This document shows, piece after piece, positions 21,497 to 40,177 of a DNA stretch of 64,000 nucleotides (the first letter of the stretch is position 1; every line of letters starts with the position of its first letter). The stretch is taken from the NCBI GenBank assembly GCA_965644495.1, contig CBFFSA010000013.1, positions 1 through 64,000 on the forward strand, written 5' to 3'. A model generated the notes under the pieces. That model was not told the origin of the DNA. It did not search any database and saw nothing but the letters and a program-made list of their open reading frames with translations. The translations under genes were made by a program, and so were the position numbers. The stretch comes from Perkinsela sp. CCAP 1560/9 (Eukaryota > Protista > Euglenozoa: Kinetoplastea).

Positions 21497-22439
21497 AACC
21501 ACATACCCATTTAACATACCCCCCGGTATGTTATCAAGGTATAGGTATGTTAAACATACAGTTTCTGTACCTTGTTGGTACTTAACCTTAGTTCATCCTT
21601 TCTTTCCCCCGCAATGGGCATACTCTTGCTGTATTTTCATGCCCGTTGCCGGTCGGCGCTAAGGCTGGAACTGTCCCCCTTTATCGCTGAAGAAGGGGAC
21701 GCGCCTTCATCCCTTCGCCCCTCCCCGACTCACTCCCCTGGAGTGAATTCTTCTCCCTCTCGGATTCTTTCCTCCCGACCCGTACCTCTCCGAGAGGGCT
21801 AGGCGTCACGGTGGCCTCACTTGAGGACCACTAGACGCGTCCCTCGCTGCCCGCGTTTACGGCTCTCCGCACGTGACGGTCGCCCAGCTCTCCGCACCTC
21901 GGCTCTGTCGCAGCTCTCTGCACCCGGATTGCCCCCGAAACTGTAATATGGGGATTACGCATCCGGCTCTCTGCACCTGCACATGACAACCGAGCTCTCT
22001 GCACCTGGGACGTCAGCTCTCTGCACCCATTCTCCTCCAGCGAGGGCAAATCCTCACGTGATCCACCCGTCGTATGCGGGTAAGGACAATGTGAGACAAA
22101 TCTCTGCAATCTAAGTGCTTGAATAAACAAATATAGGTATGTTAAGTAGACTGGTAATGAAATAGGAAAGAGAAGAAAATCACTTTCACTGTTAGAACCT
22201 GTATCTAAAGATATACCGCGCGTAGTACTAAATGCTAAGATGTTATCAAAATACGTTTAAAAACGCATACAGGAAACATCTTGTTAAAAACGTAAGTGAT
22301 ATTACGGTTGGATTTTGGTACAGTTGCACAATAAAAGCCGTGGGACGAGGGGGGGGGGTATGTTAAGTGTCGTGGGCCAGAATAACATACCCACCGGTAT
22401 GTTATCCAAGGTATAGGTATGTTAAACGGGTATGTGGTT
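21497..22439. mobile_element. TA-flanked MITE hosting an SL-capped insertion
   Basis: TA|AACCACATACCCATTTAACATACC ... GGTATGTTAAACGGGTATGTGGTT|TA. Confidence 0.8.
21554..22131 (+). mobile_element. SL-capped retroposed short RNA (SINE-like or processed copy)
   Basis: Starts with ATACAGTTTCTGTACCTTGTTG (21556-21577) and ends AATAAACAAA. Flanked by the 14-bp direct repeat TATAGGTATGTTAA (21540-21553 and 22132-22145). Confidence 0.7.
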
Positions 22440-24053: not shown

Positions 24054-26737
24054 TCATTTCTCTTTCGGAATTATTTTCGTACCATCTACGCTAAGGGCTT
24101 GCAGTTTATCAGGTAAAGTGAAATCGTTGACATTACCGTAAAGCTCCGAGTTATTGTCAAGGCAAAACCATGACAATCGTGGTGGAAGGTTATCAAATCG
24201 CACCAATCCGGAAAACTGATTATTAGAACAGTCGAGAGCATCAAGTTCGAAAGGTAAGTGTTGTAAATTAAGTGGTCCTGTAAACTTGTTGTATGATAGT
24301 TTAATTTATCATACCTTTATAAGGCAGAGAATATGCGGATAGGCCTGGGGGGCGCATATGACGCTGCCCAGACCTATCTTTTACAGACGTTATACCCGTC
24401 CTTCTGTCCAAACGGCAGACTCGCGGTTCTGCCAGATAATGAAACTGCCTCGAAGGGCGGTCTGCATTAGACTTTCTCGACATTTTTCCGCAAGCTTTGT
24501 GTCCTCGTCAAAGAGGAGATTGAGGTTTCGACAAGATGTGAGTAACGAGCCGCGGGCTCCCACTTCGAATACAACAAGGGTCGTCCTAGGGTGATTAATG
24601 CGTCGTTCATGGAAGAGAGCATTATATTTACGGGATTTGCCCTCGTGCGCCTGAGACTGGTTCTCTTCCCAGGGCACAGTGAGCTCAATGATGAACTCAC
24701 TTCCATCCTTAAGTGTAATCAAACCGTCGGGGCGAAGAAGGTCCTCACGGGTGCCGAGCCATGCCGGGGCATTCCTAAATCCGGGGATATCTAGGTGTAC
24801 GCTCTTGGTATACGGCGAACGCAGCAAGTGTTTTCCGAGCTCTTCAAGTAACATGTCATGACGGAGGGTATATCTCCCTTGCTGAAGGGACTCTTTGCAC
24901 CCCGAGAGCACGTGCCTTGTTGTTTGAGGTTCGAGTTTACATATGGGACATGTTACACTCGCACGCCGGAGACCCCAAAGCCGAAGATTGGTTCTGGATG
25001 GTAGGGGTGAAAGCGTTAGTACTGAAGCTGCGAAGCGAGAAAGTTTTTCACTGTTGAGGTTGTTCAGGGCCGCTGAGAACTCTTTCGCGAGATCAGCCTC
25101 GGAGGGGAGGCTCCACTATTTTGCTGCTGTCGGTGCCCGTCTCTGAAGCTGATTTATGACGTAAGATTCATGGTGATCACGGGCTATCTGTTGCGCCTTC
25201 CGCGCGTCATGAAGGTGTTGAATGGCGTCAGCGCTTGGACGAATATAACCAGAGGATCGTTTTTCTTCTTCTTGCTTGATTCGGGCTCGTAGTGCCGCCT
25301 GTATCGATGGGTCCCGCCACTTGTGCATCTGTGTTAAGGCTAGGATAGAGCATTCGGACCACAGCTTGGATAAACTTTTAAGGTTCCACCCTCGTTCAGT
25401 ATAAAGAATTTCGGTGCAAGTCGTGGATGCTGCATTGATCCATTTCTTAAGGTGACGTGTAATTCTTTTCTGCAATCGCAATACAAAGTTGAAAGTGACA
25501 CACGGGTGAACGGTGAGGGCGTAGCGCAGACGGGATACGATCGCTCTGTTGTAGATCCAAAGTTTTTCGGGGAGACTGTGTGCACTCTCGTCGACATTCC
25601 GAAGCCATGTTCTTAGTCTGACATCCAGCTTTTTGAAAAGTTCTTTCGCTTGCTGTGCTCCTGGTGCTATGGTCATTCCAAGAAAAGTGCTTCCACGGTC
25701 AAATATATGTGGTATCGCTTTGCCTTCGATACTGAGTCTCGGCTTCCTGGTCATGTACCCCGGGTGCTCACTGCCTTCACGCATGGACATGCACTGTGTA
25801 CGGCTCTTGTCTACGTTGATTGAGAGTCCTATTCGTCTCAGTGCAGTTTCGAGTGTGTTGGTCGCGTGCTGCATGTCGGTATCGCTGCTAGTCAGTATCG
25901 TCAGGTCGTCAACGTAGGCTTTCAGGAAATGCCTTGGAGTATCTGGGTAGTCAAGGCCATACCGGGGGCACGATTGCTTGAGGTATCGTAGTACAGTTTC
26001 CATCACTAAGTTGAAAATTATGGGCGACAGGGTATCACCTTGTAGTACGCCTCTGTGTATCGGTATAGCACGTGACAAACCTTCGACACACTTAATACGC
26101 ATTTCCGCATGTGAATACATGCTTCTATGTATGTTCTCATCTATGTTAATCATAGATCGCGGTAGACTGGTGAGGTCGATTTCACCGGATAAATTGGTGT
26201 CCGACATTAATAAGAGGAAAATATGATTCCCCAGGCAGGTTAAATCTATATTCCCCTGAAAAAAGTTGTTACACAGGATAAGTTCCTCCATGTTTTGTGG
26301 TAAATGGTGGAATTCCAAAGAGCCTGAAAATTGGTTACAGTTTATGGCAAACTCATCAAGTTCAGCCGGCAACATATCGAACAGTACTTTTCCCGTAAGA
26401 TCGTTGCAAGATGCTTTAAATTTGTGTAACGTGCGTAATGTGTAACGCCATTGCAGTGATCCTTTCAGTCGATTACTCCCAAATATGCCGAATGTTTCCC
26501 AAATAATGTTCGTTACTTGTTGTCCATCACAATCCACACCTTTCCACTCACATGCTGGCGTTGATGTATTCCACGATGGGTCTGGGTTCTCAATATCAGC
26601 GGCAAATCGTGCGAGCTCATATTCTTGTGGTTATTCGTTCCTCGCACCCTACTGGGAAGTCTACGTGTTGCATCGACATTTGACACATCAGCTGTGCAAC
26701 ACAGATAATACACTAAGGATATCATATTCGTACTCAT
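24054..26737 (-). pseudogene. LRR gene split by a retrotransposon
   Basis: The 5' part 26737-26139 (SRVRG cap, frameshift near 26632) ends LPRSMINID. The 3' part 24299-24054, absent from the ORF track, reads LSYNKFTGPLNLQHLPFEL...DGTKIIPKEK*. The halves rejoin in frame. Confidence 0.9.
24300..26138 (-). mobile_element. 5'-truncated HERO-like non-LTR retrotransposon
   Basis: RT motifs RGVLQGDTLSP and AYVDD, CCHC knuckle CPIC..H..C, RYTLRHD, RPDG..IELTVPWEE..KY. One nonsense codon at 25116. About 90-nt 3' UTR. Confidence 0.92.
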
Positions 26738-26914
26738 CGGTGTTACTGAGAACCGTTTACACAGAAAGTAAAAAAAATGTGCAACAATTCAATTTGGTAA
26801 AACATGGTAAAACCACGTCGAAAAATTGACCAAAACAATTTCCCCAAAAAGAAGAGGTCCGACGCCTACGAAGAGTTTCTGTGTACACGTTTTAGCCCCT
26901 TCTACAACCCGATT

Positions 26915-29734
26915 TCATTCCTTACCCCCTCCCCCCCTTTCCCCTCCCCTCTCCTCCCCCTCCCTCCCCCCCACCATCTCCCACACCACCAGCACCGCCA
27001 ACGCGATCCCCGGCCCGACCACCACCCCTTTCAACCCAAACGTCGTCACCCCTAGTACCATCGCGAGACCCACCAACGGGGAGGACAACCCTGGCACCCG
27101 CAACAGGGTGTCCTCCCCCCCCCGCGCCCCCACCCCCACCACCCACACCAGCGCGACCATCCCGGCCACGCTCACGGGGGTAGTACCACTACTACCCCTA
27201 CGACTACCACTACTACTGTTGTAGTCGTAGGGGTAGGGGTAGTGGTAGTAGTGGTAGTAGGCCCGGAGCGCTGCGGGGAGCACCGCGACGGAGTACTTGG
27301 GGATGTAGGGGAAGAGCCCTGTGGCGGCTCCGAGGGTTGCGGCGAGGGCGGGGTAGGGGAAGGCGAGGAGGGCGAGGGTGAGGTAGGTGACGGCGCCGTG
27401 GAAGAGGGTGAGGTGGAGGAGGGAGAGGGTGAGGGACTGGAGGCGGGAGGTGAGGGCGGCGTCGAAGGTGGTGGCGAAGGTGGTGGAGGGGGAGGGAGGG
27501 GGGTGGGGACGGGGACGGGGGGGTGGGGGGGGTTTGTTGTTGGGGCTGGGGGTTGGATGGGTAGTCGGGTTGGGGGTTGGATGGGTATTCGGGTTGTTAC
27601 TTGGATGGGTATTCGGGTTGTTGTTTAGGTTGTTATTGGTGTTGTGATTGGAGCTGTTCTTGAGGGTGGATGGGGAGGAGAAACTGGATTGTGGGTTTTG
27701 GGGGGTCGTACGGTTTTTGGGGGGAGGGAGGGTTGGAGCTGGAGGAGGTCGTAGTAGGCTTTGGGTTTTGGGGGGAGTGGTTTTGGAGGGTAGTGGAGTG
27801 GGGGGTTGTGGATGGAGGGGAATACTGGAGGCTCGGATTCCGTGCCGTGGGAGGTATCCGGGGGCGGTGCCACCTCGGCCCAGTGAAATGGGGACGGTGT
27901 GTTTCGTTTTTGCGCCCGCGGGTTTCTTGGTATGCTCCGTTGAAAAACTCGGGCGACGTGGTGAGGGGGAGCGTGAGATAGCGATGTCGGGGTGTGCCTC
28001 CGTTTGTTCTTTACACGGATAGCTCTCCGGAACCACCCCACCCCGTCGGTACCCCTCACCCGATGCAGCCACCGACCGACTGCCTCCTCCTCCCCCCTGT
28101 AGCATACGATGTCCCTTTAGTACGAGGTAGTACACTAGAGTGTGGGGCTGACGGTGTAAAAAAGTCCATAGCAAAAAGAACAACACCACCTCGTAGGCCA
28201 TCGAGAATGATCCGAGGATCAGACCCGCACACAGTGCCGCACTGGAGGCCAGCCCCGTAAAAAGAGAAGCCCCCCCGGACTGGGCCACACTCAGCATGGA
28301 GTCCACCGGGAGGCGCGCCGGTAGGGCATGTGTGAGGTTGTGGTAGAGTTGGGAGAGCGCCGCGAGACGCTCCTGGCTGATCCACGACCCCGAAGAAGAG
28401 AATTGTGGGGATGAAAAGCCGAAGTTCCCGTCCCAGTAGGGCGCCAGGTGCGACACAAGGGTGTGGTACACTGTCGTGAGGTAGGAGTGGGTCGCTGTGG
28501 TGTTGTACGCGGATGCAACTGGGAGCACAGCAGTTTCGTTTCCTTGCTGCAGCAGAGACGGAAGGGCTGAGAGTGTAGCACTCAGGTTGCTGTGAGACGA
28601 AGCCGGCTGGGTGCCATTGTGCCAAAACGTTTGAAGCGCCTCCTCCAATTGACGTGCGTGGCGTACCAGGTCGTATTGCTGAATCCACTTCTCGAGCTGG
28701 TCCTTGGCGTGTGGAAGGAGTGCAGAGCCGTAAAAGCTGACGTGGGGTTCGACCAATTGGTTCAGCGTGGAGGCATGGGCACGAAAGCTCTCAAGCAGAC
28801 TTAAAATTTCGCGCGTCGCACCGTCGAGAACGCACACGCAAGTCGCGCCCAGCAGAATGATACAAAGCAACGCTCGTAGACGCCGCGCAAGAGACGACAG
28901 CGTCAATGCAAAGTCGCGATATTGCTCCGGACTTGCGGTGAGAACAGTAGGTCCGAACGTTTTCTTGCGTTGAACGTAGAAGAGAAATTGCGGCAGAAAG
29001 GATCTCAGGCGCACCAAAGGGGAACGATGTGAAGAAGGGATGTAGCACCAAATCCACAATGGGCCCGACAATGACAAAAGAAAGAGTAAAGCCAAAAAAG
29101 AACGACCGAAAATGGAGCCTAGGACAACGCAGTATGAGAGTACCCCGAGAGTATCCAGCGTGTGCCGACCAATCAGGTGTTCCAGTGCTCCAGTAATTGT
29201 GGAACCCAGAAAAGCATGAAGCAAAGCACGGATTCCAAGCACCTTTGCACTTCCAGACAGCACTAATTCTAACGTTATCCTCCAGCTCCGTATAACTGTG
29301 GTGAAGGGAAAGACAGAGGAGTTGTCCAGAACACGCCGTGCTTGAAGTTGCGAATGTAGACTGCGCACTTCCCCTTGCTTGTGGGAGGGGTGAAAAACGA
29401 CGCTTAAGGCGACGGCCCACAAGATAGTGTCCCAATAGGGACCCAACAAGGTCCAGAGAAAAACCAAGGCGAGAAGAATAGTAGAGGTGAGAAGAAGGGC
29501 CAAAACTACAGTCCACAAGAGTGTGGTGGGATTCAGTGCATGAGAAGTCGGACGAGAACCGTTTGTTTGAAATGAAGAAGGTATAGCGTAGGTCAAAGGA
29601 GAGGACCAATCGGGAGGAGGAAAAGGTGCTGACAGAATGGATGGGGTGGCGCTGGTACGATAATGGGGAGAATGTGTGCGTGAGGGCCTTAAAGGCGGAT
29701 CGAAATCATAGAGAGAATCAGAAGGATCTTCCAT
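26915..29734 (-). CDS. TMEM245 / AI-2E-family multi-pass membrane protein
   Basis: Multiple TM helices, LLGPYWDTILWAVALSVVFHP near the N-terminus and the C-terminal PLVGLAMVLGVTTFGLKGVVVGP signature. Contains a Pro/Asn-rich loop. Confidence 0.75.
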   Translation of the reverse strand: MEDPSDSLYDFDPPLRPSRTHSPHYRTSATPSILSAPFPPPDWSSPLTYAIPSSFQTNGSRPTSHALNPTTLLWTVVLALLLTSTILLALVFLWTLLGPYWDTILWAVALSVVFHPSHKQGEVRSLHSQLQARRVLDNSSVFPFTTVIRSWRITLELVLSGSAKVLGIRALLHAFLGSTITGALEHLIGRHTLDTLGVLSYCVVLGSIFGRSFLALLFLLSLSGPLWIWCYIPSSHRSPLVRLRSFLPQFLFYVQRKKTFGPTVLTASPEQYRDFALTLSSLARRLRALLCIILLGATCVCVLDGATREILSLLESFRAHASTLNQLVEPHVSFYGSALLPHAKDQLEKWIQQYDLVRHARQLEEALQTFWHNGTQPASSHSNLSATLSALPSLLQQGNETAVLPVASAYNTTATHSYLTTVYHTLVSHLAPYWDGNFGFSSPQFSSSGSWISQERLAALSQLYHNLTHALPARLPVDSMLSVAQSGGASLFTGLASSAALCAGLILGSFSMAYEVVLFFLLWTFLHRQPHTLVYYLVLKGHRMLQGGGGGSRSVAASGEGYRRGGVVPESYPCKEQTEAHPDIAISRSPSPRRPSFSTEHTKKPAGAKTKHTVPISLGRGGTAPGYLPRHGIRASSIPLHPQPPTPLPSKTTPPKTQSLLRPPPAPTLPPPKNRTTPQNPQSSFSSPSTLKNSSNHNTNNNLNNNPNTHPSNNPNTHPTPNPTTHPTPSPNNKPPPPPRPRPHPPPSPSTTFATTFDAALTSRLQSLTLSLLHLTLFHGAVTYLTLALLAFPYPALAATLGAATGLFPYIPKYSVAVLPAALRAYYHYYHYPYPYDYNSSSGSRRGSSGTTPVSVAGMVALVWVVGVGARGGEDTLLRVPGLSSPLVGLAMVLGVTTFGLKGVVVGPGIALAVLVVWEMVGGREGEERGGERGGGGKE

Positions 29735-30432
29735 GCCAGATTTTAAAGTAGAAGTACAGAAAAGAAATAAAAAAAGTACACTTTTGTAGATAATGCGGAA
29801 ATAGAGACTTTCTAATTATCAGCCCTACAAGCCCCCGAAGCATCGTGCCCCCTGTACTACTCTCCTTTTCATAAGGAACCCTTAAAGAACCGTCGACACA
29901 TTAATTCAGGGGAAAAACATCAGGGGTGAGGTTGGGGTCTGCCGGAGTACGCTTAAAAGGAGGGGGTGCGGTACTGTCCCCGCAAACACACGTATCGCGG
30001 GAAAGATAAAATAAGGGAAGGTAAACTAAGGGAAAAATCGTAGTTGATCGTTTATTTCAGTAATCGAGGGTAGAGCGGCAGTTGTGCGACCATCGAAACA
30101 AATCACTGAACTCCATCTTTAAAAAACGATACACTTTCATCAAAACAGTACAAACCCTCATCAAAATGTTGCAAGCTAAAGTACGCATAAAATTTTAGCA
30201 CAGTCCACGTTTTCCAATTTTTTCTAATTTGCTTCAAAAAGAAATATCGGAAAAAATCTTTACATTTCTGTTACAGAAAACATTGATACATGTACAGAAT
30301 TTCTGTACATGAAGCCGAAAGTTACATTGAAAACATTCTTTAAACATTTTAACGATAGTTAAAAGATTGTTAAAATCGTAAGGGAAATAAAACTTTGTAC
30401 ATCTAGATTGTCTTTTATTTCTCTTCTGACAA

Positions 30433-31017
30433 TTACTTCACTACTATTTTTGTGTCAAACCAGTCTCGAAGACGTAAAGTATTAGGCAATTTTTGCATAT
30501 CGATGACGCCACCCAAATCCCTGTTTCTCGATAAAAACATGCTCCGCAGATTGTCGGGAATATAATCGAAGCACAGGTCTCCTGAAAAATTGTTGTCTGG
30601 AACCCAAAATTCGCGCAGTGTATGCGGAAGACTTCGAAGTTCAATAGAGCCTTCAAAAGCATTGTTTGTCAAACGAAGGACTTCTAATTGGGGAGGAATA
30701 TAGCTCCAATTTACGCTACCCGACAACATGTTTCGGCAAAGCGAAAGATAAGTCAGGGTTTGGGGGATGTATTCCCATTGAAGAGTACCCGAAAGATGCA
30801 TATTTTCCCATGAAATACCGCGAATCGTGCCTTGCGCATCGCATTCCACACCTACCCACATATTAGCCGAGTTTTCTGCTTTCCAGGAGCTGTGATGATA
30901 TTTTACGCAAGCGATAAATCGAATAAGTTCATATTCTTGTGGCATTGAAGTACCTCTAACTTTTTTTGCTTGGGAGGCCTTCATCGCGTCGCGGTACTGT
31001 AAAGGTATGAGAAACAT
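30433..31017 (-). CDS. Leucine-rich repeat protein
   Basis: KKVRGTSMPQEYEL cap, 4 LRRs and a TKIVVK end. Confidence 0.9.
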   Translation of the reverse strand: MFLIPLQYRDAMKASQAKKVRGTSMPQEYELIRFIACVKYHHSSWKAENSANMWVGVECDAQGTIRGISWENMHLSGTLQWEYIPQTLTYLSLCRNMLSGSVNWSYIPPQLEVLRLTNNAFEGSIELRSLPHTLREFWVPDNNFSGDLCFDYIPDNLRSMFLSRNRDLGGVIDMQKLPNTLRLRDWFDTKIVVK

Positions 31018-31276
31018 GATCGAGATTAAATAAGAAAACTGTGAACTCCGATGTGTAATTTAAATATTAGAGTTCAAATACTTCGTTTACCCCTTTAATC
31101 CCCCCCTTTTCGTAACCTCTCATACGCCAGCTTGTTTGTTTCTTAAAAAGTCCTGAATGATATACTACGACCCTTTGTTGATAAGATGTTGCTAAAAGTG
31201 TAACCTAGGACGCTTGTCCGAAGTCAAGACCAAAAGTTTCGCACGTATTCTGGAAAAACGAAAATTGCGAAAATAA

Positions 31277-31948
31277 TTATTGAAAAAGAAATGAAAGAGT
31301 GAGTAGTCCAATTATCGTAGCGAATCCAAGATAATGTCGCGGTTCACTAGCTTCTTCCATATGATCATGCACGACAGAAGGCCAAGCAGACTCCGACGCA
31401 TCTTCAGGAAATATGAAAACTTTATTTCCTCGCAAATCAACCCGGATAAAGGAGGAAAGAAAAGAAACATCAACAACACCAACGAAATAGTTCTGGTTTA
31501 GGAGAAGTCTCGACAAATTTACTGGCAAGGTAGTCAGATCAAGTGTTCCTTTAAGAAAATTGTCCGAGACCGAAAGGTAGTTGAGGTTGGAGGGTAGCGA
31601 AGTAAGATCAAGTTCGGATGTAAACTCATTGTGTCGAAGTTCTATTTCCAGGATTTGGTTCCCCACCTCTATTAAAGACACCTCTCCTTGAAGCTTGTTG
31701 TTAGAAACATCTATGCGGTACACCTCAACAGGGAGAAAACGCCACGTGAGATTACCTCTCAAGTGCATCATCCCCCAGTCGAGTCGAACGAGCGGTACAT
31801 CCCAAGGTGCAGGCCGCACTTTATCCCACTTTGACAATGGAGTCAATGCATTCCAGGATTGTTCGGTGTGGTGTACATTTTGCAAGAAGGAAACCAAACG
31901 AACTTCTGGAGGATGAAAACAGGATCGCGCCTTAGCAAGTCGAGACAT
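31277..31948 (-). CDS. Leucine-rich repeat protein with C-terminal hydrophobic anchor
   Basis: RLAKARS..PPEVRL cap, LRRs, and the tail LGFATIIGLLTLSFLFQ. Confidence 0.88.
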   Translation of the reverse strand: MSRLAKARSCFHPPEVRLVSFLQNVHHTEQSWNALTPLSKWDKVRPAPWDVPLVRLDWGMMHLRGNLTWRFLPVEVYRIDVSNNKLQGEVSLIEVGNQILEIELRHNEFTSELDLTSLPSNLNYLSVSDNFLKGTLDLTTLPVNLSRLLLNQNYFVGVVDVSFLSSFIRVDLRGNKVFIFPEDASESAWPSVVHDHMEEASEPRHYLGFATIIGLLTLSFLFQ

Positions 31949-32258
31949 CAAAAATGAGATAAAATCAAATAATAAAAACTCCTGACTCGGAAATAATCAT
32001 AATGAAATACTGTACCCCCCTGATCACCTGTCACTACGTGAGGGGTGGAAAATTCAAATGGCCTTATTCGCCAATATCACAAGACGAGTGAGTCGTTTGA
32101 GATGCTGAGCCTCAAAGAGGTGAACAAGACATCCAGGAAGTTGAGCAAACGTCCTAGAAAGGTTTTGCGGTGCGAATATCCTAAGAATTTTGATAGCCTA
32201 CTCACCAAGGCTTGACGTCTGAAGTTTTGTATTGCAAAAAGGGGAGTTGTTGTAAGTA

Positions 32259-33570
32259 AGAGGGGTGACTCCGGGTGGATGTACCTAGGATATCTTTCGT
32301 CAAAATTTTCCTCCTTAGTTCCTTAATATTTTTTGCTTCAATGGGAAGATACAGAAATCATGTTACTGGAATTCTTATTCTGCTGGACTTAAACGAGGGT
32401 TTCGGCATGTAATACAAGTTAATAATACATTGTGCTGCCCCAAATGTCAAGTTTGGGGGGCTATAGGTGTAGGTTGGAGACACCTAGTTGTTCTCGATAA
32501 GGACTCGTCCATCACGAGCATATCTTATGTAAAGACGTTGAAGAAAGCACAATTTCCACAGAATTGTATCTTTCAACAAGATGGGGCTACAGCACACACT
32601 GCCCGTGCCTCTATGGAGTACATTACGGATGGAATGAACGATGTACTTAAAAATTGCCCCCCCAATTCGCCTGACCTTTCCCCCATAGAAAACGTTTGGT
32701 CGATGGTCCAGGATGCGGTGGACGAAAAGACTCCATCGGATAAACTTTCACTTATCCGATGTATACGCAAAGCGTGGTCTCGTTTGCCACAAAAGGTGAT
32801 CGATAAAACTGTTTTGAGTTTTGATGCTCGCCTTAAGAAGTGTATAGAACTCAAAGGCGAAAAAGTGACAAAATGGTAATTGTAATCTAGAAACGCTAGT
32901 TGCTCTTTGTTTCAGCCCACTCTTAGGTGCGCAAAGTTCCTATGGTGAGATCTGCAAAACGCAACAAAAATGAGCTCAAACGGCCACCTGGTCGAGAAAA
33001 AAGGGGGGGGGGGGTGACTTTTCGTTGGGAGGGGTTTAGAAGCGTTAGTCCTGATTGCGAAGAACCGTGAAAAAGGGCTTTTTCAATGTTTCGAATCGTG
33101 CAGAGCTTCAAGGTGTGAAGGAAAGTGAATTCCCAGAATATTGGCGATGCACCCAACGAAGGATGGACAAGAATCGGAAACTGTTCTAGAAAGAGGAAAA
33201 AAGGTGCGGAAACTTATGAAAAAATGACCAGGAGTGAAATGAAATCCAAAATGAAGCAACAGAGTGAGTCACATAGACAAAAAAACGTACGAAAAAACTA
33301 GTACGAAAAAACGTACTAGTTTACTGCGTACCAGTTTAATCGCCGTAAGGCACGTACATTCAAGGAAAACAAATAGACACAATTAGCTACTCATTATGCA
33401 CCATACAATGTTTATTTTTACACCTAACTTGTTAGTAGTACTCCACTTGTTCGTTACATTTCATTGATGTATGCGTGACGTACATATTCATAGATCGATT
33501 ATGCGTTTTTTCACCAAGTCGGAGCTCCGTAGAAGTTTACTGGGAGCGCCTGGGCAGGAGTCACCCCTCT
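32259..33570 (+). mobile_element. Tc1/mariner element remnant
   Basis: TIR AGAGGGGTGACTCC / GGAGTCACCCCTCT. ORF 32430-32879 has VWGAI, FQQDGATAHT and PPNSPDLSPIENVW; close relative of the 14015 copy. Confidence 0.85.
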
Positions 33571-34359
33571 AAGTAGAGGGGTGTATTTCAGGTAGACCTA
33601 AATAAGCAATACTGTTGTACTCCTCACCAACACTGATTACACTGGGATTTCTTTTTCGAACTTTTTCGATAAAACATGTAGAACTATTTTTTTTTGGGGG
33701 AAACATTGAAAAGTATACCAATCATTTTGTCATCTACTAGGTTTCCTTTGATAAATATTTTTGGTGCACTGGACATGAGAAAATGTTTGACACCGGGAAC
33801 GGGATATAATTTTCGCGTTTTTGGTGCACTGAATAATCCAGGGATCTATTCCACTCAGTTAGAATAGAAGATGGCGGTACCACTGTTTGTTGCGGACTAT
33901 TCCTCTAGTTCACATTCTGATGTTTCTGTGGATAAGCGCGAACATTTCCTGGTACGGGATGCGGTAGAATATCAGAAAAATAATTCTGAGTTAAATCAAG
34001 ACGGTGCTTACTATACTTCGGGTAAAATAGTAACATCGGCCACTCCCGTCAATTCGTTATCGGAGATGTTAAGACTGATTAAAGAGCGGGGAAGACTTTG
34101 TAGTCCCACAGAACCTGAAAAGCAGTTCTCACTTAACATACAGTGCTCCAGCTGCAAAGGAAGCTTGGAAAAGTTCAACTCCCCCGAGAAACGATTCCTC
34201 TGCAGATAGAGGTGGACCAAACCCTGCGGCAGAGAATCCAACGTGATCGTCCCAAAGAAACGGTTCTCGGACAATGATGATGATGATATCATATCTTTTA
34301 AGATAGAGTATTTTGAGGATGTAACTAACTTGCGCATATGACGCTGTTAGGTGCATCCC

Positions 34360-36981
34360 TTATGCGGACAGTGTCTCTGCATCGCTCCATTGCGGGGAAT
34401 CACGCTTATGCCATAATAAGAAGCTGGAACGGATAGCAGCTCGGGAGAGTGACGCCCGACATTTAGCCCCCAAATCTTCGTCCCCTCCAAACAACCGATT
34501 AATATCCGCTGAGGAGGCTACCAGACCACCTCGTGCTCCAATTTCGAATACGAGGAGGTACGTGTTCGGGTGCACTGTTCGTCGTTCGTGTAATAGGGCG
34601 TTGTACTTGAGGCGTTTATATTCATTTGCCTGCATACAGTTTTCTTCCCAGGGGACAGTGAGCTCAACGATGAATTCTGTACCGTCAGTCAGTGCAACGA
34701 ATCCGTCTGGGCGTTGATGATTTGTATTGTTGTGCAGCCAGTGTGGTGGATTTCGGTGACCTAGTAGGTCAAAATGCTGGTATTTTGTATGCGGGGATTC
34801 TTGGATGCGTTTGGCCAGTTCAGCTAGCACTGTGTCGTGTCTGAGGGTATAACGCCCCTGATCAAGAGATGTTTTGCAACCTGAAATAACGTGTCGTACC
34901 GTCTGTGCTTCTTTTCCGCATACCACACATGTCGCATTTGAGAAGTGAAGGCCACATGTCCGAAGGTTTGACTTTGAGGGTAAAGGAGTGGTAAGTAGAA
35001 CCGAGGTCGCAAAACGTGTTAGCTTCGTGCTGTTCAGATTGTTCAGTACGGCGGAAAACTCCTTCGCAAGTTCAGTTTCGGAAGGTGTTGTCCACCATTG
35101 GGCTGCGACCGGTGCTCGTTTCTGAAGGTCTTGTACAATTTTCGCTTCGTAATATTCCCCCATGATTTGTTTGGCGCGTTTTGCGTCGTTTAGATGTTGG
35201 AGGATTTCGCATGCTGGTCGTAGTTGCCCTCTAGCTCGCCTGTTTTGCTCCTCTTCAATGCGGGAACGTAGCGCTGCTTGGACATTGATGTCTCTGGATT
35301 TATTCATTTGAGTCATCGCGGTGGCAGTGCATTCGAACCAAAGCTTAGAGAGTGCTGTTAGGCCCCAACCGCGATCTGAGTACAGGACTTCTGTGCTACC
35401 TTTAGAGGCCATGTTGATCCATTTCCTAATGTAGGAGGTTGCCGTCTTCTGGAGTCGAAGTATAAAGTTGAACGTTATGCATGGATGGACCGTGAAAGCA
35501 TATCGTAGGCGAGCGAGCATGACATTTTGATAGATCCATAGTTTTTCAGGTAGCGTATGTGCGCTTCGGTGCACATTTTGTAACCAAGTCTTAAGTTTCG
35601 CGTTCAACTTTTTATATAGCTCTCTGGCTTGTTGTGCTCCAGGGGCCAGTGTCATTCCCAGGAAGGCACTACCTCTGTCGCAAATGTGGGGAATCGGATC
35701 TCCGTCACATTCAATCTTTGGCCGCCTCGTCATATATCCTGGATGTTCCGTTCCCGCTCGAATGGCCATACATTGTACCCTACTTTTTTCGACGTTGATA
35801 GACAATCCAATGCGTCTAAGGACGATAGAGAGTGATTGTATTGCATTGTTCATGTCGAAATCACTTGACGTAATTATCGTAAGGTCATCAACATAAGCCT
35901 TTAGGAAGTGCTTTGGTGTATCGGGGTAGGATATGCCATAGTACGGGCATGTGCGACGCATGTAGCGGAGGACGATCTCCATCGCAATATTGAAGAGCAC
36001 TGGGGATAGAGTATCACCTTGTAGTACGCCACGTTGCACTGCGATTTCCTTGGTTAGTCCTTGGTCGCATTTGAATCTCGTAGTGGCTGAGAGATACATG
36101 CCTTTGATGTATTCAATGATTTCGGGTGACACGCGCGCCCAGGTGAGAGCTTCGAATATGCTGTCGTGGGAAAGCGAACCGAATGCGTTTCTGAGGTCGA
36201 TCTGGGCCAGACAGTACTGATTCTTCTTGCGCTGATGATGTTGCAGCAGGTTACACAGTGTTTGGGTGTGTTCCAGAGTTCCATTCATCCGTGGTAGAAA
36301 CCCCTTTTGGATAGTCGTCTCAATGACTCCTGAGCTTACAGCATGGTCCAGGAGTTGGTGTCCTATGATGCTGTGAAGAAGTTTTCCCAGACAGCTTGTG
36401 AGTGCTATGGGCCGCCAGTTCCTAGGTATTTTAGGGTCTCCACCTTTGTGGATAAGACGCGTGATCGCTAGAGACCACGACGTGGGGCATGTCCCGAATT
36501 TTATTAAGTCATTAAACATTTTGGCCAGGGAGCTGTATAGTGCTGGGCATCGTTTTAGCGCTGCGTTTGTGATTGTATCTTGCCCTGGTGAGCTAGAGCC
36601 CCGTTTGCTTGAGATGGCATTGACGATTGTTTCGGCTGTTACTGGTATCCACGTCATTTCGTTGGTGGCTCTAGGGCCTAGTATATCGAAGTTAGGGAGC
36701 CGGAGAGTGTCGCGCTCTTTCGTTAGGGTTTGACTGAAATGTTCCTCTATTTCGAGCATTGTACAGCTTGGGTATTGCGTGTTTGTGACTTCATCCTCAC
36801 TGGGTCTGTCCATGGCTTCAGCAGCCGCAGTCCATGGGTTTCTTGAGAAACGTTCATGCGCCCATCTACCTTCTAACGCTCGGCGTTGCACGTCGGCCTC
36901 GTCTGCGTAGATTCTTTCTAGCTTCTTGTTTTCTTTGATTTGGCGGGGTAAGGTACAGTGTATTTCGGGCTTCCGTGCCAT
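34360..36981 (-). CDS. Reverse transcriptase - CCHC knuckle - restriction-like endonuclease
   Basis: WRPIALTS, QKGF, IDLRNAFGS, GVLQGDTLSP, YVDD, CVVC..H..C, RYTLRHD, RPDG, VELTVPWEE, KRLKY and EIGARG are all present and uninterrupted. Confidence 0.93.
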   Translation of the reverse strand: MARKPEIHCTLPRQIKENKKLERIYADEADVQRRALEGRWAHERFSRNPWTAAAEAMDRPSEDEVTNTQYPSCTMLEIEEHFSQTLTKERDTLRLPNFDILGPRATNEMTWIPVTAETIVNAISSKRGSSSPGQDTITNAALKRCPALYSSLAKMFNDLIKFGTCPTSWSLAITRLIHKGGDPKIPRNWRPIALTSCLGKLLHSIIGHQLLDHAVSSGVIETTIQKGFLPRMNGTLEHTQTLCNLLQHHQRKKNQYCLAQIDLRNAFGSLSHDSIFEALTWARVSPEIIEYIKGMYLSATTRFKCDQGLTKEIAVQRGVLQGDTLSPVLFNIAMEIVLRYMRRTCPYYGISYPDTPKHFLKAYVDDLTIITSSDFDMNNAIQSLSIVLRRIGLSINVEKSRVQCMAIRAGTEHPGYMTRRPKIECDGDPIPHICDRGSAFLGMTLAPGAQQARELYKKLNAKLKTWLQNVHRSAHTLPEKLWIYQNVMLARLRYAFTVHPCITFNFILRLQKTATSYIRKWINMASKGSTEVLYSDRGWGLTALSKLWFECTATAMTQMNKSRDINVQAALRSRIEEEQNRRARGQLRPACEILQHLNDAKRAKQIMGEYYEAKIVQDLQKRAPVAAQWWTTPSETELAKEFSAVLNNLNSTKLTRFATSVLLTTPLPSKSNLRTCGLHFSNATCVVCGKEAQTVRHVISGCKTSLDQGRYTLRHDTVLAELAKRIQESPHTKYQHFDLLGHRNPPHWLHNNTNHQRPDGFVALTDGTEFIVELTVPWEENCMQANEYKRLKYNALLHERRTVHPNTYLLVFEIGARGGLVASSADINRLFGGDEDLGAKCRASLSRAAIRSSFLLWHKRDSPQWSDAETLSA

Positions 36982-38824
36982 GGGTGAATCTAAGGGATCG
37001 TTTCAGTCGTTGTATATGCTTGGATAGTTCTTGGTTCACTTTTTCTATGGCTAAAGGTCTGTATTTAAATTTGGAATGTCCTTGTTTTGTGCGAAGAACG
37101 AACCCTTTGGTGGGATTCACCTCTTGACTCACCTCAAAGGTTGATACAGCGATAGACGCGGCGAGTATAGCACCGTTCTCCTTTGCTAGGAACGCGTTTG
37201 CGGTGTCTTTGTGTAGGAGCTCCTTGCATCTCCCTAGGGCTCGCTTTTCTACTGAACGCCATTGATCATCGTTTAGTTTGACGCAGAGTTTCCCACCTTG
37301 AATGTCGTTGTGTTGTTGAAGTAGTTCATGCCTTTTCTTGTGTAAGGGATCGTCGTGGTTCGGTGCCGGGCAATGATTCGTTGCTTCTCCGGAGATATTC
37401 GTGGTATTTCTTGCATGCGTGGAAGATTGCAGTTGAGAGAGAGGCCCGTATATCTTGCAGCATCGGTGGGCGCATGAGAGCTTTTCTCGGCATGTGTGCT
37501 TGCAGGGTCCTTTTCCCCCCGCGCCTGGGTACCCAAATGTAACACAAGTCGTACTGGGTCGCGCTGCGTGGTTCGTGCTTTGATCTGGCTGTAAACTCGC
37601 GCTTTTGGGGGCTTCTTTGACGTCATTCTTCCTAGATATGTGCTTTGCTTCGTAGTGCTTCATAGTGCTGCGGTACTTCCAGTCACGCTCGGGGTCCTGT
37701 GTGGGGTCGTATCCTGACTGCATCGATCTCTCGCTTTTCTGTACTGCCTCGTTGACAGGGGCCCCTGCTTTTCTACCAGTTGCGAAAGCTTCACAGAGTT
37801 CAGAGACCCTACTAGTTGCCCATCCTGCCAACACTCCGACCTTTTCCAGAAAGGTTGTATCGTCATCATTCATGTCAGGCACTGGATTCGGGGTGGGCAG
37901 GTCGTTCACTGGGCCTTTGTACTGTGATGTTGCCGCTTTCTCTGCTCTTGAATGCGGGTTTCGCCGACTTCTAGTGGGCATGTCTGTGGCCTTCGGGGAG
38001 TGACCAAGTTCGCGAGTCGAGCTTCTCAAGTCCCATTTTAGCGTTCTGCCGGTGGTCGAGTTCAAATTCGTTGTGTCAAGGGTAGAGGTGCTTGCAGGTT
38101 CTTGATTGTGGGTAGGTCCAAATATTTTGCAACACTTGTGCAGGCACGTTAGCTTGCTAGAGCTTTTGTGTCTGCAGGGTCCTTTGAGAGGTTCCACGGT
38201 CTGTGGTTCGTTGGGTTTCGTAGAACGTGGCTTCGCAATTTGGAAAGGTGTGCCCTCTACTCTTTGTGCCGGTTGGTATGGTGTAATTTCGGTGTTGGAG
38301 TTTGTGTTTCGGGTAATTTTGATGGTAAACTTTTCAAGCCCCGGTACTTTAGCCCCGCTCACGGACTTCAGGACTGCTTTGCCTAGGGCGTTCGGGCTGG
38401 AGTACGAGTCGCTGATGCTAAGGTGGGGGTCATTGAATAGGGAAGTCCAGCTGGCGTGGTAGTACTTTTCCGATGGGTGCGAGTTTCTGCTAATTTCAAT
38501 GTAGTCGCAGGCATCGTGATGTATTAGTTCCTCGAGTGTAGCTGCCTCTATTATCAAATCATGTGGTGTTCCCTTGCCGTTGAGGGCCTTACTAAGTGCA
38601 GCTTCAGCACCTTGTTGTGAAGCGATGCGTTGTCTCACGAGATGACTAAGACAAGCGGACTTTATGTCGGGGTAGTAGTTCCAAAGCATACTATCCATCG
38701 TGCGTATTTTGACGGATCGTGCCCGGCTCTGGATGAAATGCAAAGACTGTTTCCGCGCAACGCCGGGTCCTTGAGGAAGGCCTGGTGTTGCATTTTCCTC
38801 CTGTGTGGCGGTTCTGGTTGTCAT
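36866..38824 (-). CDS. Retrotransposon N-terminal region / ORF1 with two Cys-His motifs
   Basis: 652-aa ORF directly after the SL and UTR, containing GPCRHKSSSKLTCLHKCCKIFGP and GPCKHTCREKLSCAHRCCKIYGP. Overlaps the RT ORF by 116 nt. Confidence 0.85.
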   Translation of the reverse strand: MTTRTATQEENATPGLPQGPGVARKQSLHFIQSRARSVKIRTMDSMLWNYYPDIKSACLSHLVRQRIASQQGAEAALSKALNGKGTPHDLIIEAATLEELIHHDACDYIEISRNSHPSEKYYHASWTSLFNDPHLSISDSYSSPNALGKAVLKSVSGAKVPGLEKFTIKITRNTNSNTEITPYQPAQRVEGTPFQIAKPRSTKPNEPQTVEPLKGPCRHKSSSKLTCLHKCCKIFGPTHNQEPASTSTLDTTNLNSTTGRTLKWDLRSSTRELGHSPKATDMPTRSRRNPHSRAEKAATSQYKGPVNDLPTPNPVPDMNDDDTTFLEKVGVLAGWATSRVSELCEAFATGRKAGAPVNEAVQKSERSMQSGYDPTQDPERDWKYRSTMKHYEAKHISRKNDVKEAPKSASLQPDQSTNHAARPSTTCVTFGYPGAGGKGPCKHTCREKLSCAHRCCKIYGPLSQLQSSTHARNTTNISGEATNHCPAPNHDDPLHKKRHELLQQHNDIQGGKLCVKLNDDQWRSVEKRALGRCKELLHKDTANAFLAKENGAILAASIAVSTFEVSQEVNPTKGFVLRTKQGHSKFKYRPLAIEKVNQELSKHIQRLKRSLRFTHGTEARNTLYLTPPNQRKQEARKNLRRRGRRATPSVRR

Positions 38825-38869
38825 GGAGGTTTCATACAGTTAGTACCAAGTAGAAAAATTAAAATAATT

Positions 38870-38898
38870 CAACAAGGTACAGAAACTGTATCTTTATC
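38870..38898 (-). other. Spliced-leader relic
   Basis: GATAAAGATACAGTTTCTGTACCTTGTTG contains the conserved kinetoplastid SL core ACAGTTTCTGTAC and a TTG end. Near-identical copies lie at 14535-14566 and 21556-21577. Confidence 0.85.
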
Positions 38899-40177
38899 AA
38901 CATACTCAGTGTAGGGGAAAGTTGACTCAAGTCAACGGGACCGGTGAATTGGTTTCCCGGGATGTTAAGACGCACCAGCGCCGGGGGAAGACTCGCAAGT
39001 TTGACCTCTTCTTGAAAAAGATTATCATACAGCACCACCTCCTCCAGGGAGACGGGAAGCGTGTCCCAGGGAATGCCCCCTGTGAGAAATGTTTTTGTGA
39101 GGTAGAGCATTTGCGTGGTTGCGGGAAGCGCCCTGAACTCCAGGTATCCTCTGTAAAAGTCGCGCAGGACAACCACGCGCAGCCTTCCCTGGGGGTCACA
39201 TCGGAACCCCTCCCAGGTACACTCCGAGACGGGCTCACGCCCACACCATGTGAAACGTGAGAGCACCCAGCTCGAGTGGGGGTTCTCAACGCGATGTACG
39301 AGACGCTCCATTTGCTCGTCATGAGGAAGAAGCGCTGCAATGACCTTTCCGCGACGAACGTGGACGTCGTCCACAGTATGGAGGAGAGAGAAGGCGAGGG
39401 TAGAAAGGAGGAATAAGGGCATGTAAAATATACGGGGAATGAATTGAATAAAAGAAAAAAGAAAGAAAATAAGTAAATAATGGAGGCAGTACTTACCGAG
39501 TTTAGGGATGCACTTACCGAGTTTAGGTATCTTAGAAAGTTTGTTGTGTCAAAGAAGAGTAATAGAACCGATAAAAGAAAATGGACTAATAATTTATCAT
39601 TCGTAATCTAATGAAAGTAGCATAAAAAATCAAAGAGATAAACCACATCAGAACGAAAAATTTGAATTTCGTATGTATCCTTTAAAATATCCACTTCTAA
39701 ATGAAAGTTCATAGGGAAGCAAGAGTACAACAACAAAATCAAAGAAAATATTTTACTTTTTCCACTTTTCTTCCGCGTAGTTTCATGCTTTTCGTTGGTA
39801 TAGCGGTGCCTAATCAATATTTACTACATGATCTTCAACTCAACACTTTATAAATTATTAATAATTCAGAATACTCTTTGTAAAATTTTATGACGTCAAA
39901 GTTCCTTGCGTCAAACAGATAAATAAATAAAAATGTTTGTCACGTCACGAACATTCGTTTTCTTTAGCTCAGGTATGTGCAAGGTACGTTTTTTCAATTA
40001 CAACATCGCCAATCTTTATGCAACATATCGTTTAGCAAGACCGCTGTATAAAGAACAATGCCTATAGGTACATTCAATTCATAAACACACTTTTTTAATC
40101 ATTTTTCAGGAATTTATTTTAGCAAGGTTTCTGCCTCAAGCAGGATAGAAGAACAGTCTGCAGGCTCTGAAATAATA

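What the first reader, a model, noticed from the sequence alone, without database searches (positions are those of the whole stretch)
24054..39422. Candidate retrotransposon family that targets the coding repeat unit of LRR genes
Seen: both HERO-like elements (24300-26138 and 34275-38897) sit inside different LRR genes, in sense orientation and without a TSD. Excising them restores a canonical repeat at the same register: LPRSMINID|LSYNKF (ATA GAT|CTA TCA TAC AAC) and LSPTLSML(I/S)|LSENRF (TTG ATA|TTG TCC GAG AAC). The second junction is ambiguous by one codon because GATA is shared with the SL and TCA with the tail. The elements are divergent and of different length, so these are independent events. 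Known: REL-endonuclease retrotransposons often target multicopy loci (R2 on rDNA, NeSL and CRE/SLACS on SL genes, Utopia on U2), but I know of none targeting a protein-coding repeat motif. Inference: the element reads the degenerate DNA of the LSxNxF codons (roughly YTRTCMKASAACMRKTTY). It would use the expanded LRR family as a safe harbour within the polycistron and drive LRR gene turnover. Matching register and orientation by chance is roughly 1 in 20 even given two LRR hits, but n is only 2.
Basis: partly seen in the sequence, partly recalled or inferred. Interest (0 to 1): 0.92.

Follow-up and report, generated by a model that had tools for sequence, protein, structure and literature searches.

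The report
Retrotransposons that home to LRR codons
In this spliced-leader (kinetoplastid-like) protist, a large clade of R2-like jumping genes and their small non-coding hitchhikers insert, always in the gene's direction, at one exact codon boundary of the 23-residue leucine-rich-repeat unit; I found no report of a site-specific retrotransposon whose target is a protein-coding repeat.

Summary
Both window elements lie on the minus strand, in sense, between LRR positions 8 and 9 (…L-x-x-L-x | L-S-x-N-x-F-x-G), without a TSD.

- **Held loci.** 14 of 30 reverse-transcriptase copies found by protein search, from at least 10 subfamilies (48-59% identical), have this junction. So do 4 of 11 copies of a ~570-bp non-coding partner (SINE).
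- **Pattern counts.** About 50 element 3' ends are followed in register by N-x-F/L-x-G. None is off register and about none is antisense. 25 spliced-leader-headed 5' ends are preceded in register by L-P-x-x-L-x-x-L-x (control 0).
- **Chance.** The genome holds about 4,800 LRR units, so the chance per insertion is about 1e-4.
- **Empty sites.** A 95-96% identical paralogous copy on contig C2 keeps elem 2's site empty; filling removed 2 bp. That paralog carries its own element two units downstream.
- **Limits.** Targeting is a strong preference, not exclusive: 50-75% of copies lie elsewhere with no LRR-like flank.
- **Correction.** The apparent "SL gene" flanks are SINE heads.

The scan had already noted the same behaviour on other pieces of this genome (s1-369752, s1-377395). 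I found no published precedent. The nearest are the RHS/ingi hot spot and the R2/CRE/NeSL elements.

The parts
38897..39422 (-). 5' half of LRR gene A. It has a signal-peptide-like start, an LRR N-cap and repeats, and ends at LRR position 8 of a unit (…LSPTLSML + TTGA).
   Evidence: The paralog C2:1137769-1138294 is 95% identical.
38870..38896 (-). 27-nt relic of the 3' part of the spliced leader at the 5' end of elem 2. It is joined to the flank through a GA microhomology.
   Evidence: The true SL gene is seen in L032/L033. The same relic heads other full-length elements and SINEs.
38825..38869 (-). 5'UTR of elem 2. It starts AATTATTT, contains TACTAAC and has no AG.
36866..38824 (-). N-terminal coding part of elem 2 ('ORF1'), with PCxHxCxxKxxCxHxCCK Cys/His clusters. 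It is separated from the RT part only by a 7-nt extra stretch at about 36953.
   Evidence: and table 4. Close copies have a single frame of up to 1489 aa.
34360..36981 (-). RT-nuclease coding part of elem 2. The RT spans about 35770-36441 (YVDD at 35884-35895), the CCHC motif starts at 34929, and the PD…ExT…K nuclease motif spans 34603-34713.
   Evidence: Pfam RVT_1. R2Bm 8gh6 matches at E=6.5e-32 over RT to CCHC. The nuclease motif is ≥95% conserved in 30 copies.
34275..34359 (-). 3'UTR of elem 2: an internal hairpin, a terminal CTCT-stem-loop-stem-ATGA hairpin and a (TCA)n tail. TPRT would start at 34275|34274.
   Evidence: The terminal hairpin covaries across 12 RT families and 3 SINEs.
34011..34274 (-). 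3' half of LRR gene A. It begins exactly with L9 (TTG TCC GAG AAC = LSEN…), holds four units and ends at a stop at 34011-34013.
   Evidence: The paralog C2:1137629-1137765 is 96% identical. An empty-site contig joins 34274|AT|38897.
34136..34139 (-). Unoccupied target in the window (codon 8 ATG | L9 TTA). It is two units downstream of elem 2, at the position where the C2 paralog carries its own SL-headed element.
   Evidence: Homology to C2 ends at 34138. An SL relic lies at C2:1137577-1137600 on the minus strand. See also table 5c.
26139..26537 (-). 5' half of LRR gene B, ending …LPRSMINID (position 8).
24300..26138 (-). Elem 1: a 5'-truncated copy (from RT residue ~290) of subfamily B, with one in-frame stop, the nuclease motif, the 3'UTR hairpins and the tail AAATTAAA.
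   Evidence: It is duplicated with its flanks at C2:1121426-1123287.
24054..24299 (-). 3' half of LRR gene B. It starts with L9 (CTA TCA TAC AAC = LSYN…) and ends at a stop at 24054-24056.

Best explanation
The two elements belong to a diverse, partly young clade of non-LTR retrotransposons of the restriction-like-endonuclease (R2-like) type. The clade also has non-coding SINE partners that share its 3' RNA hairpins.

The preferred integration site is one phosphodiester of the DNA encoding the 23-residue LRR unit: the boundary between codon 8 and the Leu codon 9 of L-S-x-N-x-F-x-G, on the coding strand only.

Shown here:
- The exact register and the sense orientation in about 50-80 independent insertions from at least 10 subfamilies.
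- Intact empty sites in a paralog.
- A loss of 0-2 bp and no TSD.

Inferred, by analogy with R2:
- The element protein, bound to its 3'UTR hairpins, recognises the dispersed conserved bases of the unit (CTnCCn…T…T | nTn…AAy…TTy…GGn).
- Its PD-(D/E)xK nuclease nicks the non-coding strand at the 8|9 boundary and primes reverse transcription from that nick.
- The coding strand is cut 0-2 bp upstream.
- The cDNA end, which carries a copy of the spliced leader because the template is a trans-spliced mRNA, is joined to the upstream flank by 1-3 nt of microhomology (GAT/ATA).
- Sense insertion inside a polycistron guarantees read-through transcription of the new copy.
- With roughly 4,800 units in the genome, the loss of any one LRR gene copy is cheap.

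A second, non-specific mode accounts for the half or more of copies that lie outside LRR genes.
For: - **Held RT copies.** 14/30 RT copies found by protein homology alone have an LRR flank starting at L9. Three of them reach it through a tandem SINE or a nested 3' fragment.
- **Held SINE copies.** 4/11 SINE copies have the same junction, three of them with both flanks in LRR.
- **3' side, genome-wide.** The 3' hairpin plus a 10-26 nt gap plus N-x-F/L-x-G gives 51 hits against 1 control, of which about 47 are real ends. With a gap of 27-56 nt there are 8 hits; the 5 real ones are all in register behind long tails, one of them (C1:3620840) already among the hits, so none is off register. Antisense gives 3 hits against 2 controls.
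- **5' side, genome-wide.** L-P-x-x-L-x-x-L-x followed by the SL relic gives 25 hits against 0 controls.
- **Background.** The LRR unit pattern gives 2269 hits against 38 controls, at 47% sensitivity. That implies about 4,800 units, about 1.6% of the genome, and a null of about 1.2e-4 per insertion. The binomial P for 14/30 is 2e-47.
- **Independent events.** Tails differ by family while the target stays the same. Copies 98-100% identical to each other have different flanks (L001-L003).
- **Both flanks.** Full-length elements L060→L016, C1:3742181→L020, L058→L038 and C12:200651→L002 have both flanks restoring one unit.
- **Empty sites.** The paralog C2 shows elem 2's site empty and carries its own insertion two units away.
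- **Conserved machinery.** The nuclease motif is conserved in 30 copies. R2Bm is the best solved relative. The terminal hairpin covaries and is shared with the SINEs.
- **R2 model.** The two-subunit model of R2 is described in PMC4838377.
Against: - 16/30 RT copies and 7/11 SINE copies are not in LRR genes.
- Their 3' flanks score like random DNA against an LRR position matrix, and no shared motif was seen.
- One non-LRR SINE has a 14-bp TSD and one sits in (TG)n, so the machinery clearly also integrates elsewhere.
- Subfamily C showed 0/3 LRR flanks.
- For elem 2's own family, only the window copy abuts an LRR directly.
- No biochemical evidence exists for cleavage or for which half-site is read.
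- No polymorphic (allelic) empty site was found. The empty site seen is a paralog.
The genome-wide figures therefore rest on degenerate patterns.
Confidence: 0.85

Rival explanations
1. There was one (or a few) ancient insertion into an LRR gene. It was then spread by duplication of LRR genes, or by gene conversion between LRR paralogs, rather than by targeted retrotransposition.
For: Elem 1 with its flanks is indeed present twice (C13 and C2) through a segmental duplication. LRR genes are clustered and multicopy.
Against: - Flanking LRR sequences differ from copy to copy, while elements within a subfamily are 98-100% identical.
- At least 10 subfamilies with different tails share the register.
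- The 5' truncation points, relic lengths and tail lengths vary.
- The C2/C13 paralogs differ by presence or absence at two different units.
- LRR units are too divergent at the DNA level for conversion tracts.
Confidence: 0.03
2. Integration is essentially random. Only insertions in the dispensable LRR family survive selection, which gives an apparent preference.
For: Half or more of the copies are outside LRR genes with no common motif. LRR genes are plausibly dispensable one at a time.
Against: Selection cannot produce a single phosphodiester and a single orientation. There are 0 off-register and about 0 antisense junctions against about 50 in register. The 5' side agrees.
Confidence: 0.02
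3. The nuclease has only a short, low-information nick preference, or it exploits a DNA or chromatin feature of LRR arrays. The unit merely presents that feature once per 69 bp, and there is no extended recognition of the repeat.
For: Non-LRR insertions are common. The unit's conserved bases are few and dispersed. Three of six non-LRR SINE 5' flanks score high on the upstream half-matrix, which hints at a partial-site requirement.
Against: To place about 30% of insertions into about 4,800 sites of a 42-Mb two-strand space needs about 11 bits of specificity, far more than a 2-3 bp nick motif provides. Non-LRR 3' flanks show no enrichment of the downstream half.
Confidence: 0.1

Closest known systems
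R2 (28S rDNA-specific RLE non-LTR retrotransposon; R2Bm structures 8gh6/8ibw)
   Same: - RT followed by a CCHC motif and a PD-(D/E)xK nuclease; R2 is the best solved match (E=6.5e-32).
- A conserved RH motif and nuclease residues.
- A structured 3'UTR with no poly(A).
- A precise 3' junction, a blunt or few-bp target loss, and no TSD.
- A multicopy target.
   Different: - The target is a degenerate protein-coding repeat unit, not rDNA.
- Specificity is partial (about 25-47% of copies).
- The N-terminus carries Cys/His clusters of another type; no C2H2 or Myb domain was detected.
- The 5' end carries a spliced-leader relic.
- Dedicated SINE partners exist.
CRE clade (CRE1/2, SLACS, CZAR) of kinetoplastids
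   Same: Same host group. RLE-type LINEs with zinc-finger-like motifs, site-specific for a multicopy locus (PMC12278014).
   Different: CRE elements insert at one position of the SL RNA gene, have a poly(A) tail and make TSDs. Here no copy was found in a true SL gene: the SL-like flanks of L002 and L023 are SINE heads. Tails are short and family-specific, and there is no TSD at LRR sites.
RHS (retrotransposon hot spot) genes with ingi/RIME or L1Tc/NARTc in Trypanosoma
   Same: A protein-coding multigene family in which retroelements recurrently occupy one position of the coding sequence, creating pseudogenes (PMC7563717).
   Different: The elements there are APE-type (ingi/L1Tc) with TSDs. The site occurs once per gene in the 5' coding region, not in a tandem repeat unit. 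The RHS family is defined by the hot spot, whereas here the target is a generic LRR module present about 4,800 times.
NeSL/Utopia/HERO/R4-type target-specific RLE elements
   Same: RLE lineages that repeatedly switch among multicopy targets: SL exons, U2, tRNA and microsatellites including (TG)n (PMC4640811). One SINE copy here sits in (TG)n.
   Different: The listed targets are RNA genes, transposons, microsatellites and telomeres, and none is a protein-coding repeat. No protease or RNase H domain was detected here. Clade membership by RT phylogeny could not be tested.

Membership tests
RLE-type (R2-group) non-LTR retrotransposon | Reverse transcriptase of the non-LTR type | tested here: met
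   Pfam RVT_1, E=6e-29. R2Bm, R2Tg and L1 ORF2 are the top PDB matches. YVDD lies at 35884-35895.
RLE-type (R2-group) non-LTR retrotransposon | CCHC motif and PD-(D/E)xK restriction-like endonuclease C-terminal to the RT, with no APE domain | tested here: met
   C-x2-C…H…C, then RH, RPDG, ELT.PWE and K..KY, conserved ≥95% in 30 copies. There is no Exo_endo_phos hit.
RLE-type (R2-group) non-LTR retrotransposon | Sequence-specific integration into a multicopy target, with a precise 3' junction | tested here: met
   About 50 in-register junctions against 0 off register. Specificity is only partial: 14/30 and 4/11.
RLE-type (R2-group) non-LTR retrotransposon | N-terminal C2H2 zinc finger and/or Myb DNA-binding motifs | tested here: inconclusive
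   No Pfam hit even at E≤10. There are 1-4 PCxHxCxxKxxCxHxCCK clusters, with only a weak NF-X1-like lead (score 0.76).
CRE clade (SLACS/CZAR/CRE) | Insertion at a fixed position of the SL RNA gene | tested here: not met
   0 of 41 junctions in the held loci lie in a true SL gene. The true gene (…TTG|GTATGAGAAGC) was seen only in L032/L033. The SL-like flanks are SINE heads.
CRE clade (SLACS/CZAR/CRE) | Poly(A) tail and target-site duplication | tested here: not met
   Tails are short family-specific motifs such as (TCA)n, AAATTAAA or ACAAACAAAC. LRR sites show a 0-2 bp loss and no TSD.
HERO clade | Placement within HERO in an RT phylogeny with reference elements | not testable with these tools
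   No HERO, NeSL, R4 or CRE reference sequences are available.
NeSL/Utopia | Ulp1-like protease or RNase H domain, and an SL-exon or U2 target | tested here: not met
   No such Pfam domain was found. The target is LRR coding DNA.
SINE mobilised in trans by the RLE elements | Non-coding, shares the 3' recognition structure and the target with the autonomous elements | tested here: met
   The ~560-590-bp units have no ORF and the same two 3' hairpins. They show the same LRR junction. They occur in tandem with RT elements inside one LRR unit.

The most novel reading that the evidence does not exclude
The clade has evolved protein recognition of a codon-periodic, highly degenerate DNA signature (about a dozen conserved bases spread over about 55 bp of the LRR unit, both half-sites, as in the two-subunit R2 model). 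It lives in long-term association with a secreted or surface LRR family. In that association it acts as a steady generator of truncated, fused and recombined LRR genes, so that host-family expansion and element expansion feed each other.
Probability: 0.2. Interest if true: 0.9.

Novelty: new variant of a known kind. Interest (0 to 1): 0.78.

Why it matters
Target-specific non-LTR retrotransposons are known for rRNA, snRNA, tRNA and SL genes, transposons, microsatellites and telomeres (PMC4640811). A lineage whose preferred target is a protein-coding repeat module would add a new target class.

It would also show that an R2-like machine can read a very degenerate, amino-acid-constrained DNA signature. 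R2-type proteins are being developed for site-directed gene insertion, and here at least 10 diverged natural variants share one degenerate target, which is useful comparative material.

For the organism, it identifies a mutational force acting specifically on a very large, probably surface or secreted, LRR family. Together with the spliced-leader relics, it gives a clean case of retrotransposition through trans-spliced mRNA inside polycistrons.

Tried and rejected
1. **SL-gene target.** I first read the flanks of L002 and L023 as SL RNA genes, that is, CRE-like targeting. I rejected this because the sequence after the leader part is not the SL intron. It is the body of a ~570-bp SINE, which itself ends at an LRR L9 codon.
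2. **Allelic empty site.** Read laying found contigs joining 34274|AT|38897. Genome searches show this is the paralog on C2, not an allele or another strain. There is therefore no evidence of polymorphism, and the runs are contigs only.
3. **Fetching more junctions.** I switched to pattern counts.
5. **Shared motif or LRR-like signal in non-LRR flanks.** None was found. There is only a weak upstream-half hint in 3/6 SINE sites.
6. **Naming the clade from homologues.** The 107 hits carry no informative names. One contig look-up was not on record.
7. **N-terminal domain.** Pfam found nothing. The Atlas gave only a sub-threshold NF-X1 lead.
8. **Order of insertion in tandem pairs,** to decide upstream versus downstream recognition. 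The available data are not informative.

Full report
**What is in the window**

Every gene-like frame between 18 and 51 kb lies on the minus strand, and so do both elements.

Elem 2 (34275-38896) begins with 27 nt identical to the 3' part of the organism's spliced leader. A 45-nt leader sequence and about 4.4 kb of coding sequence follow. The coding part carries Pfam RVT_1 (E=6e-29). It then has a CCHC motif and an RPDG…ELTVPWE…K..KY nuclease motif. An 85-nt 3'UTR ends in a (TCA)n tail. The best solved relative is the Bombyx R2 protein (8gh6, E=6.5e-32, aligned from the RT to the CCHC motif).

The apparent ORF1/ORF2 overlap is caused by 7 bases at 36953 that other copies lack (table 4). Close copies have a single frame of up to 1489 aa.

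Elem 1 (24300-26138) is a 5'-truncated member of another subfamily, 59% identical in protein.

**Genome-wide test with held loci**

A protein search of the window's own 21-Mb genome found at least 57 matches, of 811 candidates, in many subfamilies 48-59% identical to elem 2. I read the 3' junction of the 30 best.

- Fourteen are followed by an LRR frame that starts at L9. Eleven abut it directly. Two reach it through a tandem SINE (L002, L023) and one through a 70-nt fragment of another element (L004).
- Copies that are 98-100% identical to one another (L001-L003) have unrelated flanks.
- Tails differ by subfamily while the target stays the same. These are therefore independent retrotranspositions and not copies of one insertion.

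A ~570-bp non-coding element has the same SL relic at its head and the same two 3' hairpins. It shows the same junction in 4 of 11 copies, three of them with both flanks in register.

Four full-length elements or tandem pairs have both flanks restoring one canonical unit.

**Genome-wide test with patterns**

| Pattern | Hits | Control |
|---|---|---|
| 3' hairpin, 10-26 nt gap, then N-x-F/L-x-G codons (sense, in register) | 51 (about 47 real ends) | 1 |
| Same, gap 27-56 nt (off-register test) | 8 (5 real) | 0 |
| Antisense equivalent | 3 | 2 |
| L-P-x-x-L-x-x-L-x codons, then the SL relic | 25 | 0 |
| All hairpin-bearing ends | 258 (about 195 look real) | 16 |
| LRR-unit pattern | 2269 | 38 |

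- The roughly 47 real ends comprise 25 and 12 of two SINE types and 11 of RT types.
- All 5 real ends in the 27-56 nt test are in register behind long tails. Four of them are new ends and one (C1:3620840) was already counted, so no junction is off register.
- All 25 junctions on the 5' side lie at codon 8 (±2 nt).
- About 24% of the hairpin-bearing ends are at the LRR site, or about 30% after correcting for motif sensitivity.
- The LRR-unit pattern recovers 47% of the units in the DNA I hold. That implies about 4,800 units, or about 1.6% of the genome.
- The chance that a random insertion hits this bond in sense is about 1.2e-4. The binomial P for 14/30 is 2e-47.

**Empty sites**

Contigs of two public runs join 34274 to 38897 with AT between. 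Genome searches show this is a paralogous segment on contig C2, 95-96% identical, and not an allele.

The paralog reads …ATG TTG AAT | TTG TCC GAG AAC…, which is LSPTLSMLN|LSENRF. Elem 2 therefore entered an intact unit, removed two bases (AT), and joined its leader relic through a GA microhomology.

The same paralog has its own SL-headed element exactly two units (138 nt) downstream, where the window is intact (table 5c).

Elem 1 is present in both segments and therefore predates the duplication.

**Limits of the specificity**

- Sixteen of 30 RT copies and seven of 11 SINE copies are not in LRR genes.
- Their flanks share no motif and score like random DNA on an LRR position matrix.
- One SINE lies in (TG)n.
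- The window's own SINE (21552-22124, plus strand) has a 14-bp TSD. It shares its site with another SINE subfamily in L036.

The LRR unit is thus a strongly preferred target, not an exclusive one. I could not decide whether the upstream or the downstream half-site is read. The unit's conserved bases lie on both sides, and the tandem pairs are uninformative.

**Mechanism**

Shown:
- The exact junction and the orientation.
- The small target loss.
- Microhomology at the 5' join.
- A conserved nuclease motif in 30 copies.
- A covarying terminal hairpin shared with the SINEs.

Inferred, from the R2 model (PMC4838377):
- Protein bound to the 3' RNA nicks the non-coding strand at 8|9 and primes reverse transcription.
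- A second cut 0-2 nt upstream opens the coding strand.
- The cDNA of a trans-spliced mRNA is joined by microhomology.

From my own knowledge, not checked here, R2Bm also loses 2 bp at its target.

**Comparison and novelty**

CRE/SLACS/CZAR, the known kinetoplastid RLE clade, insert in SL genes, carry poly(A) tails and make TSDs (PMC12278014). None of this holds here.

The RHS hot spot for ingi/RIME (PMC7563717) is the nearest precedent for a coding multigene target. It involves APE-type elements and a single site per gene.

Four literature searches gave no report of LRR-unit targeting.

Earlier notes of this scan on other pieces of the same genome (s1-369752, s1-377395) reached the same reading for the SINE. 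I confirmed it independently.

I rate this a new variant of a known kind.

Noticed in passing
L044-L053, L061-L072 (e.g. G000:C1:1443136, C1:2277982): More than 600 spliced-leader relics occur in 21 Mb (263 + 361 pattern hits). Many are near-complete leaders, each followed by a different ORF and preceded by the poly(A) of the previous unit, in head-to-tail arrays. They look like retro-copied trans-spliced mRNAs amplified as DNA. The copied leader reads ATCTTTAACG… where the SL gene has AACTTTAACG….
   Followed up: partly
window 38825-38869; L045-L072: Unrelated SL-headed units and the RLE elements all begin their 5'UTR with AATTATTT. Elem 2's 5'UTR has no AG, and the genomic copy has TTG, not AG, before it. 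How the leader is re-added at the same nucleotide in each cycle is unexplained.
   Followed up: no
window 21552-22124 (+ strand); L036: An SL-headed SINE lies antisense to the gene cluster and is flanked by a 14-bp duplication (TATAGGTATGTTAA). A SINE of another subfamily sits at the same point of the same repeat in L036. This may be a second recurrent, non-LRR target, possibly with a different integration mode.
   Followed up: partly
L040 (G000:C1:3069689): A SINE copy has (TG)n microsatellite on both sides and lies inside the coding region of another RT element.
   Followed up: no
G000:C2:~1.120-1.138 Mb versus window 24-39.4 kb: A segmental duplication (95-96% identity) of the LRR cluster. 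It shares elem 1 but differs by elem 2 (C13 only) and by a B-type element with a nested SINE (C2 only).
   Followed up: partly
L003:4102-5601 and alignment A1: The N-terminal half of the element proteins carries 1-4 copies of a PCxHxCxxKxxCxHxCCK Cys/His cluster and a conserved ~130-aa domain just before the RT. Pfam gives no hit, and there is only a weak NF-X1-type zinc-finger lead.
   Followed up: partly
G000:C1:663750-665576, next to the true SL genes at C1:661316 and 661613: A more distant RT-RLE copy (38% identity) lies about 2 kb from the only true SL RNA genes I saw. It may be an SL-locus-associated cousin. It was not fetched.
   Followed up: no
window 36953: Elem 2 has 7 extra bases relative to the copies in the read contigs. 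This splits the single long frame into two overlapping ORFs, so the window copy is probably defective.
   Followed up: partly
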